Assembly: GCA_025594325.1 (NCBI GenBank)
Contig: JANHCV010000003.1
Location: forward strand, 2,046,001 to 2,110,000
Direction of reading: 5' to 3'
Source: Blastocladiella emersonii ATCC 22665
Lineage: Eukaryota > Fungi > Blastocladiomycota
Length of the DNA stretch: 64,000 bases
In this document: positions 3,855 to 23,909 of the stretch, piece after piece
Layout of the letters: each line of letters opens with the position of its first letter
Position numbering within the stretch: the first letter of the stretch is position 1
Made by a program: the position numbers and the translations under genes
The notes under the pieces: generated by a model
Databases searched by the model: none
What the model was told of the DNA's origin: nothing
Seen by the model: only the letters and a program-made list of their open reading frames with translations

Positions 3855-6800
3855 ATGCATCGACCGCACGCCGGGTCGCGCGTCCGCCGCGCCGCCCGCG
3901 CCGCCGTCGGGGCCGCCGTGTTCACGCTCGCGCTCGCGCTGCTGGCTGGCACTGCCCTCGCCGAAAGTACGCCCGCCGATGCATCCGAGTTTCGCGTCTC
4001 CATGACCGCCAACTGGCGCCAGGACCCTGTCGTCGAGGCCTAGTACGCACCTCGCACCGCAACAGAGACGGTGAGCTGGTCCCTAACACACACCACCGTC
4101 TGTAGCGATCTCATCGCCTCGCACAACCTGACCCTCGCCGACGAGCTGCTACACAGCGCGGGCCGGCACCACGACCCCGACACGGTCCTCACGACCGCGG
4201 GCCTGCTGGGTCTCGACACGACCGCGCAGTCGCTCGTCGCCGCCTCGCTCGCATTCCGGGAGCGCGCCCCGCGCGTCGCCGCCTTCTTTGACGTCTACGA
4301 CGCCGCCGCCGGCGCGAGCCTCCCGACCGACCTCGCCGACTGCTCGTACCTCGTGGCCGTCGCCGACGGCGCCCCGCTCTCGTGCGACCTGGCCGAGATC
4401 GCCGCCGCCGTCACCGACCCGGCTGCGCCCGCCAAGCCCGTGCCGCTGATCCCGGACCTCGACCGTGCCGTGTTCGGCGACGCGGTCGCGACCCGCACCA
4501 TCGTCGTCTACGGCAACCCGCGCACCCGCGGGTTCGCGTTCGGCTGGGCCCGCCTGCGCGAGCTGCCCGTCCGTATCGCGCTGCGCTACCGCCCGCTCCC
4601 CGACGCCGTCAGCAAGCCCGACCCGATCCACCTCGCCGGGTACCTCGTCCACCTCCAGGTCAAGGACACCGAGTACAAGGTCACCGACGACCGCACCGAC
4701 CTCGCCACTACCACCTCCTCCTCCTCCGACGCCGCCGCGCCGGCACCCGTCCTGCGCAAAATCGACGACAAGGCACTCGAACACGCGGGCGCCGCCGTCG
4801 CCGCGCACGTCACGTCGCTCGACGACTTTGTCGCCGTCTCGGCCGACCTCCCGCTGACGCTCCCCGCACTCATCGACCGCGGCGTCCCCGCGAACGCCAC
4901 CGTGGACCTCTCCCGCATGGCGCGCGCCACGGCCAACGCCGTCAACGCGCTGTGGGTCAACGGGATGCCCCTGCGCCTGCCCACCGCCGACGCCTTCACG
5001 CTGCTCGCCGCCGTCCAGCACGAGCACCGCCTGCGCACGCGCGCCGCGGGTTTGGGGGTGGATGCCGCGACGCTCGACGCGGTTCTCGCGCGCGGCGGCG
5101 GCGGCGCGGGTGGGGAAGGGCACGTCGACCGGTTCGATCTGACGACGGTCGCCGACTCGGACGTCGTGTGGCTCAACGACCTCGAGGACCGCGCCGACCC
5201 GCGGTACGCCGCGTGGCCGACCGAGCTGCACGCGTACCTGACGGGCGGGATGCGCGGCAACCTGCCGCACGTCGCGCGCAACGGGCTCACGGTGCACGCG
5301 TTCCTCGACCTCGCCGACGTGAACCACGCCTCGGTCCTGTCCAGCCTGTACCGGTTCGCCGCCGGCGGCGTCGCGCTGCGCGTCGGGGTCGTGCCGCTTG
5401 TCGCCGACCCCGAGGACCGCGAGGCGTTGAGCAACCAGCTCGCGCTCGAGTTCACCGACATGGCCGCGCAGCAGGGCCCCGACGCCGCCGTCCCCTGGCT
5501 CTTGCGCGTCGTGACGGGCCAGCAGGCCCTGACCAAGCGGCGCCGGCGCGACCTCGCGGCCGACGGCAAGCTGCTCGCGCAGCTCGCGCGCGTGCGGACC
5601 AAGTACGGCGTCCCCGCCGCCACGGGCGAGCTGTTCGTCAACGGCGCGCCCGTCCCGCTCAACGCCATGTTCGACGGGTCGATCGGCTGGTACGTCGACC
5701 GCGAGGCGCAGCGGCTCGCGCAGCTCGTCATGATGGGTGTCGTCTCGGACAAGTCCAGCGACCCGCTCGCCAAGCAGCTCGCCCGCGGGCTGTGGCCCCG
5801 ACGCACCGAGTTTGCCTTCGGCGACCGGCCCGCGGTGTTTGCTGAGACGACGATGACCGCGGACGTGCCGCAAGTCGACGCCGAGGCGGACGACGCCGAG
5901 GCGGACGACGCCGACCAGCGCCGCGCCATGCGGTTCGCGCACGTCGCCCTGGCGGGCCTCATCGACCCGAACCTGCGCGCCGCCGCGGAGCAAGCGCAGT
6001 CCGCGCTCGGGTTCGCCCTCGAGCCGCACGCCAAGCTGCAACCCGGCGCCGACCCGGAACCCGCCATCATCATCAACGGCCGCCGCATCTCGCTCGCGGG
6101 CCTCGAGCACGACGACGACGACGCCACCCACGCGCTCGCCACGCTCGTTCGCGTCGAGTTTGCCCGGCGCGTGCGCCCGCTCGTCGACCCGCGCACGCGC
6201 GGCACCGACGACGACGTGCGCGCGTTCTGGCGCGCGTCCGTGATCCGGTACTGGAACCAGATCGAGGTTGCGCGGCTGCGGCTTCCCGCGAGCCCCGCCG
6301 AGCCGCGGAGCGACCCGCTCGCGGTCCTCCCGTGCCACGCGACGCCGGCCGCGTGTCTCCGCGCGCCCGCTAGGGTGGGTAATGATGTCGAGCCGATCCG
6401 CGTCGTCGCGGTCCTCGACCCCGTCTCGGAAGAAGCCCAGGCGCTCGCGCCCGTCCTCGCCGACCTGCACGCGCGGATCCCCGCGCTCGACGTGACGCTC
6501 GTCTGGCACGTCGGTCGGCCCGCGGCGAAACCCGAGCGGTTCACGCGGTACGTCGCGCCCGTCAATAACGGCATCCCCGCGGCCAAGTTCCACGGCCTCC
6601 CCAACATCCTGTACACGCTCGCGATGCAGACGCCGCACCCGTGGGTCGTCGAGGCCACGGCGTCGCCGCTCGATCTCGACAATATCGTGGTCCCGCGCGG
6701 CGGGGCAGGGGCCGAGTTTGCGCTCACGGCGCTCCTCGTCGAGGGGTCCGCCGAGGATACCGCGACGGGGCAGCCGCCTGCGGGGACGCAGTTTGTCCTG

Positions 6801-8066
6801 AAGCAGTCGCGGGGTGTGCGCGCCGAGACCATCGTCATGAACAACCTCGGGTACTTCCAGCTCAAGGCGCGGCCCGGGCTGTGGCAACTGGGTCTGCGCG
6901 AGGGCCGGTCCGCCGAGGTCTACCGGGCCGTTGACCAGGCGGTCCTCGTCGACAGCTTCCGCGGCGTCGAGCTCGCGTCGCTCAAGGTCGCGAAACGCAA
7001 GGGCATGGAGCGCGCCAGCGTGCTCGACGAGATGCACGAGAAGCACGAGGCCGAGCGCGTCGATGCGGGACGTGGCCGCGGGCGCGGCGCTGGCGGGTGG
7101 CTCGCGGCGCTCGGCAAGCTGTTCGGGTTTGGCGGCAGTAGCGGCTCGGGTTCGGCCGGTAGCTGTGGCGGCGGGAGCAGCAGCGACGGGCGGATCCACG
7201 TCATGTCCGTAGCGTCGGGCCACCTGTACGAGCGGTTCCTGTCGATCATGATGCAGTCGGTGGTCGAGCACGCGAGCCGGCCCGTGACGTTCCACCTCAT
7301 GGGCGACTTCCTGTCCCCCTCGTTCAAGGCGTTCCTGCCCGCGCTCGCCGACCGGTTCGGGTTCGAGTACCGGCTCGTGTCGTACGCGTGGCCGACGTGG
7401 CTGCGCGCGCAGCGCGTCAAGCAGCGGACCATCTGGGGGTACAAGATCCTGTTCCTGGACGTGCTGTTCCCGCTCGACCTCGACCGCATCGTGTTCGTGG
7501 ACGCGGACCAGGTCGTCCGCACCGACCTCGCGCAGCTCATGGACCTCGACCTGCAGGGCCGCGTCTGGGCGTACACGCCCTTCTGCGAGTCGCGCAAGGA
7601 GATCGAGGGGTTCCGGTTCTGGAAGCACGGGTACTGGGCCAACCACCTGCGCGGGAAACCGTACCACATCTCGGCGCTGTACGCCGTCGACCTGCACCGG
7701 TTCCGCACCACGGCCGCGGGGGATATCCTGCGCGCGCAGTACCAGGGGCTCTCGGCCGACCCCAACTCGCTCGCGAACCTCGACCAGGACCTCCCCAACA
7801 ACCTCCAGCACGACCTGCCCATCTTCTCGCTCGACCAGGACTGGCTGTGGTGCGAGACGTGGTGCTCCGACGCGTCGCTCACGGCCGCCAAGACCATCGA
7901 CCTGTGCAACAACCCCATGACGAAAGAGCCCAAGCTCGACCGCGCGCGCCGCCTGATCCCTGAGTGGGAGACGTACGACCGGCGCGTCGAAGATCTCCGC
8001 CGCGCGCTCGCTGAGCAGCAGACGGCGGAGGCGGCGGTGCCCGCGCCGGGTCGCGACGAACTCTGA
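3855..8066 (+). CDS. UGGT: UDP-glucose:glycoprotein glucosyltransferase (GT24), 2 exons (3855-4042, 4106-8066)
   Basis: Hydrophobic signal peptide, LQVKDTEYKVTDD, and a C-terminal GT24 domain (SVASGHLYERF, WGYKILFLDVLFP, FVDADQ, NLDQDLPN, WLWCETWC, IDLCNNP), ending in the ER-retention signal RDEL. A 63-nt intron (4043-4105) removes the TAG at 4041. Confidence 0.95.
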
Positions 8067-8100: not shown

Positions 8101-8987
8101 CTACGCCGACGCCGACGCCGACGCCGATGCCGCGTTGACCACGTCCTGCAGCTCCGCCAGCCCGGCGTCGCACACGCGCCACAGCTGCGCAACACTCGCC
8201 TCGGCCGCCGCCGCAACACCCCCGGCCCCCGCGAGCGCACTGTTCGAGAGCGACACGGCCGGCGGCACGCGCGCCAGCCGGCTCGAGTTGCCGAGGTTTG
8301 GGATCTCGATCGGGATCCGGTACGCCGTGTGGCTACACAGACGGGCGGCGAACTGTCAGTCTTTGGTGGCGTAGAAGAGAGTTGTCATCGTACTCGTCGC
8401 CCGCGTGCCGCTGGAAACACGTCTGCGTCCACGCCGCGATCCCGCCGGCGTCGGCGTGCGGCTGGACGAGCAGGAACACGCACGGGTGGCCGTCGGCGAC
8501 CTGCTCGCTCACGCTCGTCCACACCGCGGCCTCGCGCAGGCCCGGCGACGCGGCGCCGTGTCGCGCGGAAAAGTGGCCGAGCACGCGGCAGCCCGGGAAC
8601 TTGGTGCGCGCTGAGGCGAGGGCCGGGGTGAGGAGGGCGAGGTTCAGAGTGCCGCTTGGCGTGTACCACTTGGTGCCCGCGGGGAAGGTCAGGATGTCGT
8701 TTACGACTAACGGGCAAGGTGTTAGTGGTGAGAAACTAGGCTTCATGCCACTATCGTACCGAAGCGCACCTCGCGCGTCTCGTGCTGGTCCATGGAGTGG
8801 TCGTGCACCGACAGCTCGACGGTCGAGTTGACGTGGCCGAACAGCAGGCCGTCGGTCGAGCCCTACGTCGGAAGGGCAGTGAGCGAGGGGGCGGGCAGCG
8901 ACCAAAAGCAACGCCGTGTACGCCGTGGCCGAGGTGCGCGAGCCGCGCGAGCAGCGGGCCCGGGATCGAGAAGCTGGTGCGTTCCAT
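8101..8987 (-). CDS. Abraxas/ABRO1 (FAM175)-like MPN- pseudo-deubiquitinase subunit of BRISC/BRCA1-A, 4 exons (8987-8922, 8862-8760, 8706-8394, 8332-8101), 237 aa
   Basis: The spliced product is open with total length divisible by 3; introns are 59, 53 and 61 nt. Motifs align in order with recalled human Abraxas: TDGLLFGHV/TEGFLLGEV, WYTPSGTLN/FYNSSGEVN, VLGHFSARH/VVGWYKFRR, GLREAAV/TFRERLL, VFLLVQP/VFLLLTP, RIPIEIPNLG/RVPLVVANLG. Confidence 0.75.
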
Positions 8988-9453
8988 CAAGTTAGATCTT
9001 GAGTGGTTCATGGGTTGCTGCATTGAGCGCTGCGAGGGAGAGGTGAGAGGGCGAGGCGAGAAGTGGCGCAACGCGCGACCACTCGCACGACGTGTCCCGC
9101 ACTCGCCATGGTCGCGCTTGATCGTGGTCATCCGAGCCTGCCCGACCGCCGGCCGAGGCGGGATCATGGCCGGCCGAGCCCCCGAAGCTCCTCTCTCCAT
9201 CGCGCCATCACGCCGCCGTGGCTGTGGCGACGATGGCCTTCGTGGCCACCGTGGCCGTGGTCGAGTAACTGGCGAGTGACGAACCGCAGCCGCAGCGCGG
9301 TCATCACGCTCAGCCAGCCAGGGAGAGATACGGATCATCGAGCGGTGTATGTATGGCGAGTTTGGACACGGAATAGTAGGGAGGGCAGGAACAACAGCAA
9401 AAGATGTGGGAGGAGCGAGAAAGGGCGTGTGCGAGCGAGAAGAGAAGAGCGAG

Positions 9454-22244: not shown

Positions 22245-23682
22245 TCACGTCGCCTGCAACCGCCCCACAAACAGATCCGCCTCGTCGAGCAACCATCCCC
22301 GCGTCCTCGCGAGCAGGTCGTCAAGCGACCACCGCGAACTGAACGCCCACGACTTCCATTTAACGGTCCACTCGGGGATCATGCCGAGCGGGCCGAGCAG
22401 GGCGAGGTCGGCCGATGACGCGCTGGGCTGCAGGTCCGGGCTCGCGGGCGACGCCATGTACAGCGGGGCGCGCAGGGTGAGCGACGGCGGGTCGGCGGGG
22501 AACCGGTCGGGTAAGTGGACGGTGACGAGGACCAGCGTGCTGGGCGAGGCGCGCGGCGCGTCGAGGACAAAGGTAGCGGAGGCGTAGTTGGTCGTGTCGA
22601 GCTCGACGACGTTTCTACGATCGATGGAGTTAGCGCGCGAAACCGCACCGTAAACGTGAGTCGATCGTACTCGGCGAGCGTTGCAGCCAAACGCGCGATA
22701 AACTGGCGACGCTGAGAAAACCCCGAGAACGTGGACCCGATCCCTTCCCTGACAGCCGCCGTCACGTCGAGGAGGTAGTCGTACAGCGCGCCCTCGCGCG
22801 CGTAGGTCGGGAACTTGAACGCGTCCTGTCGGCTGACCCACGCGGCGGGGAGCCAGTGCGACACGTTGACGTCGGTGAGGACAAACTCGAGTCCGCCGGG
22901 CGTCGACGTGAACGTGTGGTCGACGAGGACCTGCAGCGTCACGGACCGGTCGGCGACGGCGTCGGGCCCGTCCTCGTGCTCGACGGCGATGGGCAGGGCG
23001 AGCACAATCGACGTGGTTTCCAGCCCGCTGACCCCGCCACCCATCGCCGGCGTGCTCGCGCCCGTGCCGCCAGACCCGGACCCGCCGGGGAAGATGCCGA
23101 CGTCGAGGTCGCCGAGCGTGGCGCACGTTGACAGGTCGTAGGCGAGCTTGTCGTTAGGGAAGCGCAGGACGAGGTCGTGGTGGTGCGCGCGGAGTAGGTC
23201 GCGGATCCGCTTCACGAGCGCGACGAGGACTTCGGGCGCGGTCGCCGCGGTCCACTGGTCGAGCACGGGCGCGAGGTCGGCCAGCGAGCAGTGGAAGTTG
23301 CTGTCGCCGGGACACACGACGAGGATCTCGGGCGGGAAGTCGAGGCCGAGGTCGGCGTCGAAGATGAACTCGACTAGATGCACAGGGTAGGTTCAGACGA
23401 GACACCCAGAAACGGGTCCAGGAGAGTAAACGGACCCGTCGCGACGATGCGGCCGCACAGCGAGATGGACGCGGTGAGCGGCTTTCCCGTGACGAGCCCG
23501 GCGTGCTGGATCGCTGCGAGGTCGTCGGGCGAGAAGACGGCGGCGAGGCGGGCGAGCGAGACGGGCAGCGGCGTCGGCTTGGGCGCCTCGAGCCGCGCGA
23601 GCGGGAAGTCGCCGGCGACGAGCGGCTGCGCGGCGGCGACCAGGCGCTCGAGCGCGGCCAGCGTGGTGCCCCGTTGCGCCAT
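22245..23682 (-). CDS. BRE/BRCC45 (BABAM2)-like tandem UEV protein, 3 exons (23682-23436, 23373-22671, 22614-22245)
   Basis: Ordered motifs match recalled human BRE: EFIFD..DFPPE/DIIFN..ELPPD, RRQFIARL/RREYIAAF, VVELDTTNY/VVEYDAEGF, VHLPDRFPADPPSLTL/IDLPLFFPRDQPTLTF, FSSRWSLDDLLAR/YSPRWDGNEMAKR. Introns are 62 and 56 nt. Confidence 0.8.
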
Positions 23683-23909
23683 GTCCAGATGCATTCGCTA
23701 GCGTATGGGTTTCAATGGGGGAAGAGAAGAGAGGGGTGGCGTTCGCCTCGCCTCGAAGAGAAGGGATCGACGCGCGACGCGTTCCCTTGAAGCGGCGGCC
23801 TCACGTGGGCCCACCTCGCGACTTGATCTGTCCCACACGCGGCCGGAGACAAGTCCCGTCGCTGGGTCAGATCGGCCTGCTCTGCCGCGAGCCACGACGC
23901 ACCCTCTCC
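23683..23909. promoter_or_regulatory. Putative bidirectional promoter shared by BRE-like and RAD5, with an MCB-like ACGCGT element
   Basis: Only about 230 bp separate the divergent start codons; ACGCGC at 23770 and ACGCGT at 23777. Confidence 0.45.

What the first reader, a model, noticed from the sequence alone, without database searches (positions are those of the whole stretch)
8101..8987. Hidden Abraxas-like gene: a minimal, BRCA1-independent BRISC-type subunit in a fungus-like genome
The ORF track shows only fragments here, but three canonical introns give an open 237-aa protein whose ordered motifs match the Abraxas/ABRO1 MPN- domain (seen in sequence, compared with recalled human sequence). 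It is known that Abraxas partners BRCC36, BRE and MERIT40 in K63-specific deubiquitinase complexes of animals and plants, and these complexes are absent from budding and fission yeast. This copy ends shortly after the start of the coiled coil (...VVNAASASASASA*) and lacks the C-terminal pSPTF BRCA1-BRCT-binding motif. I infer a stripped-down ancestral BRISC core retained in an early-diverging fungus.
Basis: partly seen in the sequence, partly recalled or inferred. Interest (0 to 1): 0.75.

Follow-up and report, generated by a model that had tools for sequence, protein, structure and literature searches.

The report
Abraxas-type BRISC scaffold in Blastocladiella
The proposed spliced gene is real and encodes an Abraxas/ABRO1-family inactive-protease scaffold in the early-diverging fungus Blastocladiella emersonii, whose genome also holds the partner enzyme BRCC36. 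It is an ordinary new member of a known family, and GenBank already lists it as a hypothetical protein.

Summary
Observation confirmed. On the minus strand, exons 8987-8922, 8862-8760, 8706-8394 and 8332-8101 give a 237-aa frame through three 53-61 nt GTAC...TAG introns.

- **Public record.** The GenBank protein H9P43_003549 (Blastocladiella emersonii ATCC 22665, 'hypothetical protein', 247 aa) uses the same three junctions.
- **Ortholog.** All three introns sit at the same position and phase in the Allomyces macrogynus ortholog AMAG_13303.
- **Family.** AMAG_13303 passes Pfam PF21125 (Abraxas MPN) at 41 bits against a cut-off of 27. A two-sequence profile hits only Abraxas 1 and Abraxas 2 among all PDB chains (E 1.9e-6 and 4e-4). 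The JAMM metal motif is absent, so the domain is MPN-minus.
- **Copy number and C-terminus.** The gene is single-copy. It ends after one short predicted helix, 34 bp from the convergent UGGT stop codon, and has no SPxF motif.
- **Partners.** A BRCC36 gene with a complete JAMM motif lies on contig 17. HMM scans missed it because introns cut it into micro-exons. A probable BRE gene lies 13 kb away in the window. MERIT40 was not tested.
- **Not obtained.** No RNA run was listed, both structure models were poor, and binding is untested.

Three words are off: 'hidden' overstates it, 'stripped-down' is really the ancestral single-scaffold (KIAA0157-type) state, and 'minimal' is modest. Verdict: new member of a known kind. 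Other first readers of this scan flagged BRCC36, BRE and MERIT40 elsewhere in this genome.

The parts
8922..8987 (-). Exon 1 (ATG at 8987; 22 codons, phase 0 end)
   Evidence: Translated. Maps to P0001 residues 11-32. The start aligns with the N-terminus of the Allomyces ortholog.
8863..8921 (-). Intron 1, 59 nt, GTACAC...GTAG
   Evidence: Sequence. Same position and phase as Allomyces intron A.
8760..8862 (-). Exon 2 (103 nt; carries the GLLFG segment that stands where MPN+ proteins have the catalytic Glu region)
   Evidence: Translated. Maps to P0001 residues 33-66. Aligned to human Abraxas 1.
8707..8759 (-). Intron 2, 53 nt, GTACGA...CTAAC...TTAG, phase 1
   Evidence: Same position as Allomyces intron B.
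8394..8706 (-). Exon 3 (313 nt; core of the MPN-minus domain; no HxH...S..D metal motif)
   Evidence: Translated. 100% match to P0001 residues 68-170 and 48% identity to P0002. Aligned to Abraxas 1.
8333..8393 (-). Intron 3, 61 nt, GTACGA...CTGAC...GTAG, phase 2
   Evidence: Same position and phase as Allomyces intron D.
8101..8332 (-). Exon 4 (end of the MPN domain with the RIPIxxPNLxNS segment, a Gly/Ala linker, one predicted C-terminal helix, an Ala-Ser tail and the TAG stop at 8103-8101)
   Evidence: Translated. Maps to P0001 residues 172-247. Helix 209-245 appears only in a low-confidence model.
8988..9099 (-). 5' region used by the public gene model for a 10-aa N-terminal extension (micro-exon near 9088-9099 spliced to 8996). 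Doubtful.
   Evidence: P0001 residues 4-7 map to 9099-9088 and residues 1-3 could not be placed. The extension has no counterpart in the Allomyces protein.
22245..23694 (-). Probable BRE/BABAM2 (BRCC45) gene, a second subunit of the same complex, 13 kb away. This is context and not part of the gene under review.
   Evidence: Pfam PF06113 hits on two adjacent, collinear pieces: 21.1 bits (E 1.6e-4, profile 205-282) and 18.8 bits (E 7.9e-4, profile 271-319). Each is under the 25.8-bit cut-off. The three best ESM Atlas clusters are BRE, but at only 0.80. There was no PDB sequence hit.

Best explanation
Window 8987-8101 (minus strand) is a real, single-copy, four-exon gene of Blastocladiella emersonii (GenBank H9P43_003549). 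It encodes a member of the Abraxas/ABRO1 (FAM175, KIAA0157) family: an MPN-minus pseudo-deubiquitinase with no zinc site.

By homology (inferred), it is the scaffold that heterodimerises with the MPN+ metalloprotease BRCC36. That gene is present on contig 17 with a complete JAMM motif. The pairing would use the alpha1-centred MPN-MPN interface and a C-terminal helix, and would switch on K63-linkage-specific ubiquitin cleavage. BRE (probably present 13 kb away) would add on to form a BRISC-like core.

The protein represents the undivided, pre-vertebrate scaffold. There is one copy, no BRCA1-binding pSPxF tail and no long C-terminal region.

Shown here: the gene structure, family membership, absence of the metal motif, single copy, and presence of BRCC36. 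Inferred: binding, activation, K63 specificity and cellular role.
For: - Gene model.
- An independent public model uses the same junctions.
- All three introns are conserved in position and phase in Allomyces.
- The orthologs share 43-48% identity across all exons.
- Family: PF21125 at 41 bits, over the 27-bit cut-off, for the ortholog. That family is also precomputed on the ortholog in the public record.
- PDB hits are exclusively Abraxas 1 and Abraxas 2, and the alignment runs across all four exons.
- The two best ESM Atlas clusters carry PF21125.
- Only one locus in the genome matches.
- BRCC36 on contig 17: exon 1 hits only BRCC36 chains (8 of 8, best E 2.5e-7). The exons read HEEVMG...IGW, YHSHPNITVQPSHV, then a split Asp codon.
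- All the other JAB-domain loci were assigned to Rpn8, CSN5, eIF3h, Rpn11, AMSH, eIF3f, Prp8 and a further MitMem_reg protein, so none of them competes for the Abraxas role.
- BRE-like gene in the window.
Against: - The window's own protein gets no Pfam hit even at E 10, whole or by exon. A six-frame genome scan with PF21125 found nothing. Membership therefore rests on the ortholog plus weak direct scores of 23-31 bits.
- An exhaustive search with exon 3 found only one true relative among 1.84 billion representatives, so the lineage is very divergent.
- Both AlphaFold models were poor (pLDDT 44.6 and 42.7), so the fold is not confirmed.
- No RNA run was listed.
- The helical region after the MPN domain is short and matches neither PF22299 nor any other family.
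- Both BRE hits are below the Pfam cut-off.
- MERIT40 was not tested.
- No binding test was made.
Confidence: 0.75

Rival explanations
1. It is an Abraxas-derived gene that no longer works in a BRISC-type complex. It would be a fast-evolving relic with a truncated helical region, either without function or with a new, BRCC36-independent one.
For: Extreme divergence: no Pfam hit for the window's own protein and only one relative in the exhaustive search. Only one short predicted helix follows the MPN domain. No expression data were available.
Against: The open frame, all three intron positions and 43% identity are kept between two genera. The short C-terminus is also shared by both. BRCC36 with an intact JAMM motif is retained, and BRE probably is too. 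In animals BRCC36 needs such a scaffold for activity (PMC4579573).
Confidence: 0.12
2. It is a divergent MPN-minus protein of another family (a CSN6, Rpn8, eIF3f/h or EMC8/9-like paralog), and the Abraxas likeness is only shared MPN fold signal.
For: ESM Atlas ranks 3-11 are eIF3h, JAB and CSN6 clusters at 0.89-0.91, close to the top score of 0.93. Direct scores to Abraxas are weak at 23-31 bits.
Against: PDB searches return only Abraxas 1 and 2. None of the many Rpn8, CSN6 or eIF3 chains appears, even at E up to 1-10. The ortholog passes the curated PF21125 cut-off over the full profile length. The genome has separate Rpn8, eIF3f, eIF3h and a further JAB+MitMem_reg gene.
Confidence: 0.07
3. 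It is not a real gene. The spliced frame would be a chance product of a GC-rich sequence in which long open frames are common.
For: At 67% GC, long open frames occur on both strands everywhere. There is no transcript evidence.
Against: There is a specific ortholog with conserved intron positions. The family-level homology spans all four exons in order. Intron GC drops relative to the exons.
Confidence: 0.03

Closest known systems
KIAA0157/ABRO1 (Abraxas 2, FAM175B), the BRISC scaffold. The insect KIAA0157 is described as the ancestral single scaffold (PMC7692841; PMC4579573).
   Same: An N-terminal MPN-minus domain of about 180 residues followed by a helical segment. No pSPxF motif. One scaffold gene per genome. 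It co-occurs with BRCC36 and a BRE-like gene. The PDB profile hit to Abraxas 2 has E 4e-4.
   Different: It is much more divergent. Only one short predicted helix follows the MPN domain, where the ant structure has two (alpha4 and alpha5). It does not match PF22299 (BRISC_FAM175B_helical). It is 237-247 aa against about 415 aa in human. It is fungal, a kingdom in which I found no published report of this complex.
Abraxas 1 (FAM175A), the BRCA1-A complex scaffold of vertebrates
   Same: It is the best sequence match in the PDB (E 1.9e-6 with the two-sequence profile; E 4.9e-4 alone). The alignment covers the whole MPN-minus domain.
   Different: It lacks the C-terminal pSPxF motif that binds the BRCA1 BRCT domains, and it lacks the long C-terminal region. 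According to PMC7692841 the Abraxas/ABRO1 split dates from vertebrate ancestry, so this protein predates that split.
AMAG_13303 of Allomyces macrogynus ATCC 38327 (P0002)
   Same: It is the ortholog: 43-48% identity, the same three intron positions, the same short C-terminus, and a 'hypothetical/uncharacterized' label.
   Different: It is 218 aa, has one extra intron, and is less divergent, so it passes PF21125 where the Blastocladiella protein does not. Its gene neighbours differ.

Membership tests
Abraxas/ABRO1 (FAM175; Pfam PF21125 MPN_2A_DUB_like) | Sequence homology to the family's MPN domain over its full length | tested here: met
   The ortholog P0002 scores 41 bits (cut-off 27, E 2e-10) over profile positions 2-170 of 171. 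P0001 links to P0002 at E 8.9e-16 on exon 3 alone. The A1 profile hits only Abraxas 1 and 2 in the PDB. Caveat: P0001 by itself gets no Pfam hit.
Abraxas/ABRO1 (FAM175; Pfam PF21125 MPN_2A_DUB_like) | MPN-minus: no JAMM metal-binding motif (E ... HxH x7 S xx D) | tested here: met
   The stretch aligned to the Abraxas pseudo-active site reads ...LGHFSARHGAASPGLRE..., with no HxH or S..D pattern. By contrast the contig-17 BRCC36 has HEEVMG, YHSHP and PSHV-D.
Abraxas/ABRO1 (FAM175; Pfam PF21125 MPN_2A_DUB_like) | C-terminal helices (alpha4/alpha5) that form the coiled-coil helical bundle with BRCC36 | tested here: inconclusive
   One helix of about 25-37 residues is predicted after a Gly/Ala linker, but only in low-confidence models. 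There is no PF22299 hit. Both blastoclad proteins end there.
Abraxas/ABRO1 (FAM175; Pfam PF21125 MPN_2A_DUB_like) | The MPN+ partner BRCC36 is encoded in the same genome | tested here: met
   Locus L029 (G000:C17:1360350-1363366, minus strand). Exon 1 hits only BRCC36 chains. The JAMM exon was found by pattern search and the exons were translated.
Abraxas/ABRO1 (FAM175; Pfam PF21125 MPN_2A_DUB_like) | The other core subunits BRE/BABAM2 and MERIT40/BABAM1 are present | tested here: inconclusive
   BRE: two collinear sub-threshold PF06113 hits, concordant weak Atlas hits and no PDB sequence hit. MERIT40: only an unchecked first-reader note. I had no query or profile to test it.
Abraxas/ABRO1 (FAM175; Pfam PF21125 MPN_2A_DUB_like) | Physically binds BRCC36 and is needed for its K63-specific activity | not testable with these tools
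Biochemistry is needed.
Abraxas 1 (BRCA1-A-specific scaffold) | C-terminal pSPxF motif that binds the BRCA1 BRCT repeats | tested here: not met
   P0001 and P0002 hold no SPxF anywhere. The proteins end ...NAASASASASA and ...EIARLVE. A downstream exon is unlikely because the convergent UGGT stop is 34 bp away.
MPN fold (structure level) | A confident model or structure with the MPN beta-barrel/helix fold matching Abraxas or ABRO1 | tested here: inconclusive
   Two AlphaFold2 runs on the two-sequence alignment gave pLDDT 44.6 and 42.7. That is too poor for a fold search, so none was run.

The most novel reading that the evidence does not exclude
Blastocladiomycota keep a working BRISC-type K63 deubiquitinase (BRCC36, a single Abraxas-type scaffold, BRE, perhaps MERIT40). 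Its scaffold ends after one short helix. It would then be a natural minimal activator of BRCC36 that assembles without the two-helix bundle and long tail of the animal proteins. The complex would predate the animal-fungal split and would have been lost later, within the fungi.
Probability: 0.3. Interest if true: 0.5.

Novelty: new member of a known kind. Interest (0 to 1): 0.35.

Why it matters
BRISC and BRCA1-A are studied almost only in animals, with some work in plants. The reviews I could read mention plants, insects and vertebrates but not fungi (PMC7692841), and budding yeast lacks these complexes (PMC3431379 Table 1).

A scaffold, BRCC36 and a probable BRE in two blastoclad genera show that the module was present in the fungal ancestor and was lost in the lineages leading to the model yeasts. 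Because plants and animals both have it, this is expected and not surprising.

The practical value is twofold. A 'hypothetical protein' gets a name. A short, naturally truncated scaffold could help define what BRCC36 activation minimally needs.

Tried and rejected
**Searches that came back blank or unusable**
- Pfam scan exon by exon: no hit at E 10.
- Six-frame scan of the genome with PF21125: nothing, and the control genomes were also silent, so this is uninformative.
- PDB search with exon 3 alone: only a chance hit, E 0.49.
- Word-index protein search with exon 3: blank, as expected from its length window.
- The same tool with the two-sequence alignment found only the two blastoclad proteins.
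- PF18110 (BRCC36_C) in the genome: only chance-level hits.
- PDB search with P0002 alone: blank.
- PDB search with the BRE-like ORF: blank.
- Literature: no paper in the held library links BRCC36 or Abraxas with chytrids, blastoclads or other early-diverging fungi.

**BRCC36 candidates**
- JAB and Prok-JAB scans did not find BRCC36.
- I first took L009 (C15:1031091) for BRCC36 because its best eukaryotic PDB hits are BRCC36. I rejected it after the contig-17 gene appeared. From memory L009 looks like MYSM1/MPND. That was not tested, and no SWIRM domain was found.

**Structure**
- Two AlphaFold2 runs were too poor to use, so no fold search was run.

**RNA evidence**
- The look-up of sequencing runs listed no run.

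- I never joined the exons into one query. Full-length work used the public protein P0001 that a search returned.
- The contig-17 BRCC36 was searched exon by exon only. Complex prediction of scaffold with BRCC36 was therefore left out, because it would need a joined sequence without a reference.
- The third costly protein search was left unused.

Full report
**1. The observation**

The region lies between two convergently and divergently placed genes. A UDP-glucose:glycoprotein glucosyltransferase gene occupies 4071-8066 on the plus strand (Glyco_transf_24, 460 bits) and ends in RDEL. A septin gene starts at about 9454 on the minus strand. The ORF list shows only fragments on the minus strand between them.

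Reading the minus strand, I placed the exons as follows:
- Exons: 8987-8922, 8862-8760, 8706-8394 and 8332-8101.
- Introns: 59, 53 and 61 nt.

Each exon was translated by reference.

All three introns start GTAC and end TAG. Introns 2 and 3 carry CTAAC and CTGAC branch-like sites. Intron GC is 0.49-0.66 against 0.68-0.74 for the exons.

**2. Independent support for the gene model**

An exhaustive search of 1.84 billion representative proteins with exon 3 alone returned two real matches:
- P0001, a 247-aa protein identical to the exon.
- P0002, a 218-aa protein at 48% identity.

The other two hits are repeat proteins at E near 1e-3.

The word-index search named both proteins. P0001 is 'hypothetical protein H9P43_003549 [Blastocladiella emersonii ATCC 22665]'. 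P0002 is 'hypothetical protein AMAG_13303 [Allomyces macrogynus ATCC 38327]'. The record GCA_000151295.1 was confirmed as Allomyces.

The genome's 21 contigs match the published B. emersonii assembly, which was annotated with funannotate (PMC9730499).

P0001 also has a 10-aa N-terminal extension from a micro-exon near 9088-9099. I could not fully place that extension, and it has no counterpart in Allomyces.

Mapping P0002 on its own locus (L015) shows four introns. Three of them sit at the same aligned residue and phase as the three Blastocladiella introns (read against alignment A1).

So the gene is real with high probability, but it is not hidden. It is in GenBank without a name.

RNA evidence could not be had: no sequencing run was listed.

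**3. What the protein is**

Searched exon by exon, the window's protein has no Pfam hit. P0001 whole has none either, even at E 10.

Its ortholog P0002 passes Pfam PF21125, 'BRCA1-A complex subunit Abraxas 1 MPN domain'. The score is 41 bits against a cut-off of 27 (E 2e-10), covering positions 2-170 of the 171-position profile. The public record already carries that Pfam tag on the Allomyces gene.

Against all PDB chain sequences:
- P0001 alone hits only human and mouse Abraxas 1. The best E is 4.9e-4, and the alignment runs from residue 12 to 192, across all four exons.
- A profile of P0001+P0002 hits six distinct sequences. All are Abraxas 1 (E 1.9e-6) or Abraxas 2/ABRO1 (E 4e-4). None of the many Rpn8, CSN6 or eIF3 chains appears.

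The two nearest ESM Atlas clusters carry PF21125 (0.93 and 0.92). Other MPN families follow closely.

The stretch that stands where MPN+ enzymes have HxH...S..D has no such motif. The domain is therefore MPN-minus.

Only this one locus in the genome matches the profile.

Two AlphaFold2 runs on the two-sequence alignment gave pLDDT 44.6 and 42.7. I did not use them for fold searches. The fold is unconfirmed at structure level.

**4. The C-terminus**

After the MPN domain come a Gly/Ala-rich linker, one predicted helix (low confidence) and an Ala-Ser tail. Neither blastoclad protein holds an SPxF motif, and both end at nearly the same point. The stop codon is 34 bp from the stop of the convergent UGGT gene, so a missed downstream exon is unlikely.

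According to the review PMC7692841, a single scaffold (KIAA0157) is the ancestral condition, and Abraxas and ABRO1 arose by duplication in vertebrate ancestry. A single scaffold without the BRCA1-binding tail is thus the expected ancestral state and not a reduction.

Plant and arthropod cluster representatives are 269 and 280 aa. That makes 237-247 aa only modestly short.

The ant structure has two helices (alpha4 and alpha5) after the MPN domain, and they bundle with BRCC36 (PMC4579573). Here there seems to be room for one. This is the one feature that might be truly different, and I could not test it.

**5. The partners**

*BRCC36.* A JAB-domain scan of the genome found ten loci. I assigned them as follows:

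| Locus | Assignment | Basis |
|---|---|---|
| L003 | Rpn8 | JAB + MitMem_reg |
| L004 | CSN5 | PDB E 1.5e-116 |
| L005 | eIF3h | eIF3h_C domain |
| L006 and L010 | Rpn11 | RPN11_C domain |
| L007 | AMSH | PDB E 1.9e-59 |
| L008 | eIF3f | PDB E 3.5e-23 |
| L011 | Prp8 | PRP8 domain IV, PROCT |
| L012 | A second JAB + MitMem_reg protein | Domain pair only |
| L009 | An MPN+ gene whose best eukaryotic PDB hits are BRCC36 | PDB search |

From memory L009 looks like MYSM1/MPND. I did not resolve it.

A back-translated pattern for W-Y-H-S-H-P, with one mismatch allowed, then revealed a site on contig 17. There an intron acceptor directly precedes YHSHPNITVQPSHV.

Reading that locus (L029, minus strand) gives five exons:
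- Exon 1: 119 codons containing HEEVMG.
- Exon 2: 15 codons ending IGW.
- Exon 3: the 14-codon JAMM exon.
- Exon 4: 28 codons, preceded by a split Asp codon.
- Exon 5: 114 codons at the C-terminus.

Exon 1 hits only BRCC36 chains in the PDB: 8 of 8, best E 2.5e-7. The strongest aligned segment is the BRCC36 stretch around RRLDK..DRVE.

The JAB model scores exon 1 at only 13.9 bits. This explains why the HMM scans missed the gene.

The span 2043-921 of L029 is 1123 nt.

The genome therefore has a BRCC36 with a complete catalytic motif.

*BRE/BABAM2.* In the window, 13 kb away on the minus strand, two adjacent pieces match Pfam PF06113 in collinear order. The scores are 21.1 bits (E 1.6e-4, profile 205-282) and 18.8 bits (E 7.9e-4, profile 271-319). 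Each is below the 25.8-bit cut-off.

The three best Atlas clusters are BRE, but at a weak 0.80. A PDB sequence search was blank. I rate it as probable.

*MERIT40 and BRCA1.* Only unchecked first-reader notes exist elsewhere in this genome. I had no query to test them.

**6. How it most likely works**

Shown: the gene structure, family membership, MPN-minus status, single copy, and co-occurrence with BRCC36.

Inferred from the animal structures (PMC4579573):
- The scaffold's MPN domain pairs with the BRCC36 MPN domain around helix alpha1.
- Its C-terminal helix packs against the BRCC36 C-terminal helices.
- This holds the BRCC36 active site in a productive shape, giving K63-specific cleavage.
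- BRE docks on the scaffold.

Nothing here shows what the complex does in a blastoclad.

**8. Verdict**

- The gene is annotated but unnamed, not hidden.
- It shows the ancestral state, not a stripped-down one.
- BRCA1-independence is inferred only.

I found no paper in the held library that reports BRISC or BRCA1-A subunits in early-diverging fungi. The Pfam tag on the Allomyces ortholog is already public. Presence in both plants and animals makes presence in the fungal ancestor expected.

This is a new member of a known kind, of moderate-to-low interest. The apparently single-helix tail is the only possibly unusual feature.

Noticed in passing
L029 = G000:C17:1360350-1363366, minus strand, about 2043-921: A BRCC36 ortholog whose JAMM motif sits in a 43-nt micro-exon (YHSHPNITVQPSHV) between two other small exons. 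Pfam JAB and Prok-JAB six-frame scans miss the gene entirely. It was found only with a back-translated motif allowing one mismatch, where the mismatch was the intron acceptor.
   Followed up: yes
L009 = G000:C15:1029591-1032875, plus strand, about 1501-1908 (about 1 Mb from the window): A second MPN+ gene with an intact JAMM motif (...GWYHSHPTFDAIPSVRD...) behind a long proline-rich N-terminal frame. Its best PDB hits are an archaeal Rpn11-like protein and BRCC36. From memory it resembles MYSM1/MPND (2A-DUB). Pfam found no SWIRM domain.
   Followed up: partly
window 22245-23694 (-): A probable BRE/BABAM2 gene (two collinear sub-threshold PF06113 hits) that shares a short divergent promoter region with a large SNF2/RAD5-like ORF starting at 23715 (+).
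   Followed up: partly
window 8988-9099 (-): The GenBank model H9P43_003549 adds 10 N-terminal residues through an upstream micro-exon. Residues 1-3 could not be placed on the DNA, and the extension has no counterpart in Allomyces. The ATG at 8987 looks like the better start.
   Followed up: partly
window 4071-8066 (+) and 8101 (-): The UGGT gene (Glyco_transf_24, ending RDEL) and the Abraxas-like gene converge with only 34 bp between their stop codons, so their 3' UTRs must overlap.
   Followed up: no
L013/L014 = G000:C11:553889-553987 (+) and 565774-565872 (-): Two identical-scoring weak hits to PF18110, 12 kb apart on opposite strands, each inside a 600-aa open frame. This suggests an inverted duplicate of some gene. 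The PF18110 match itself is chance-level.
   Followed up: no
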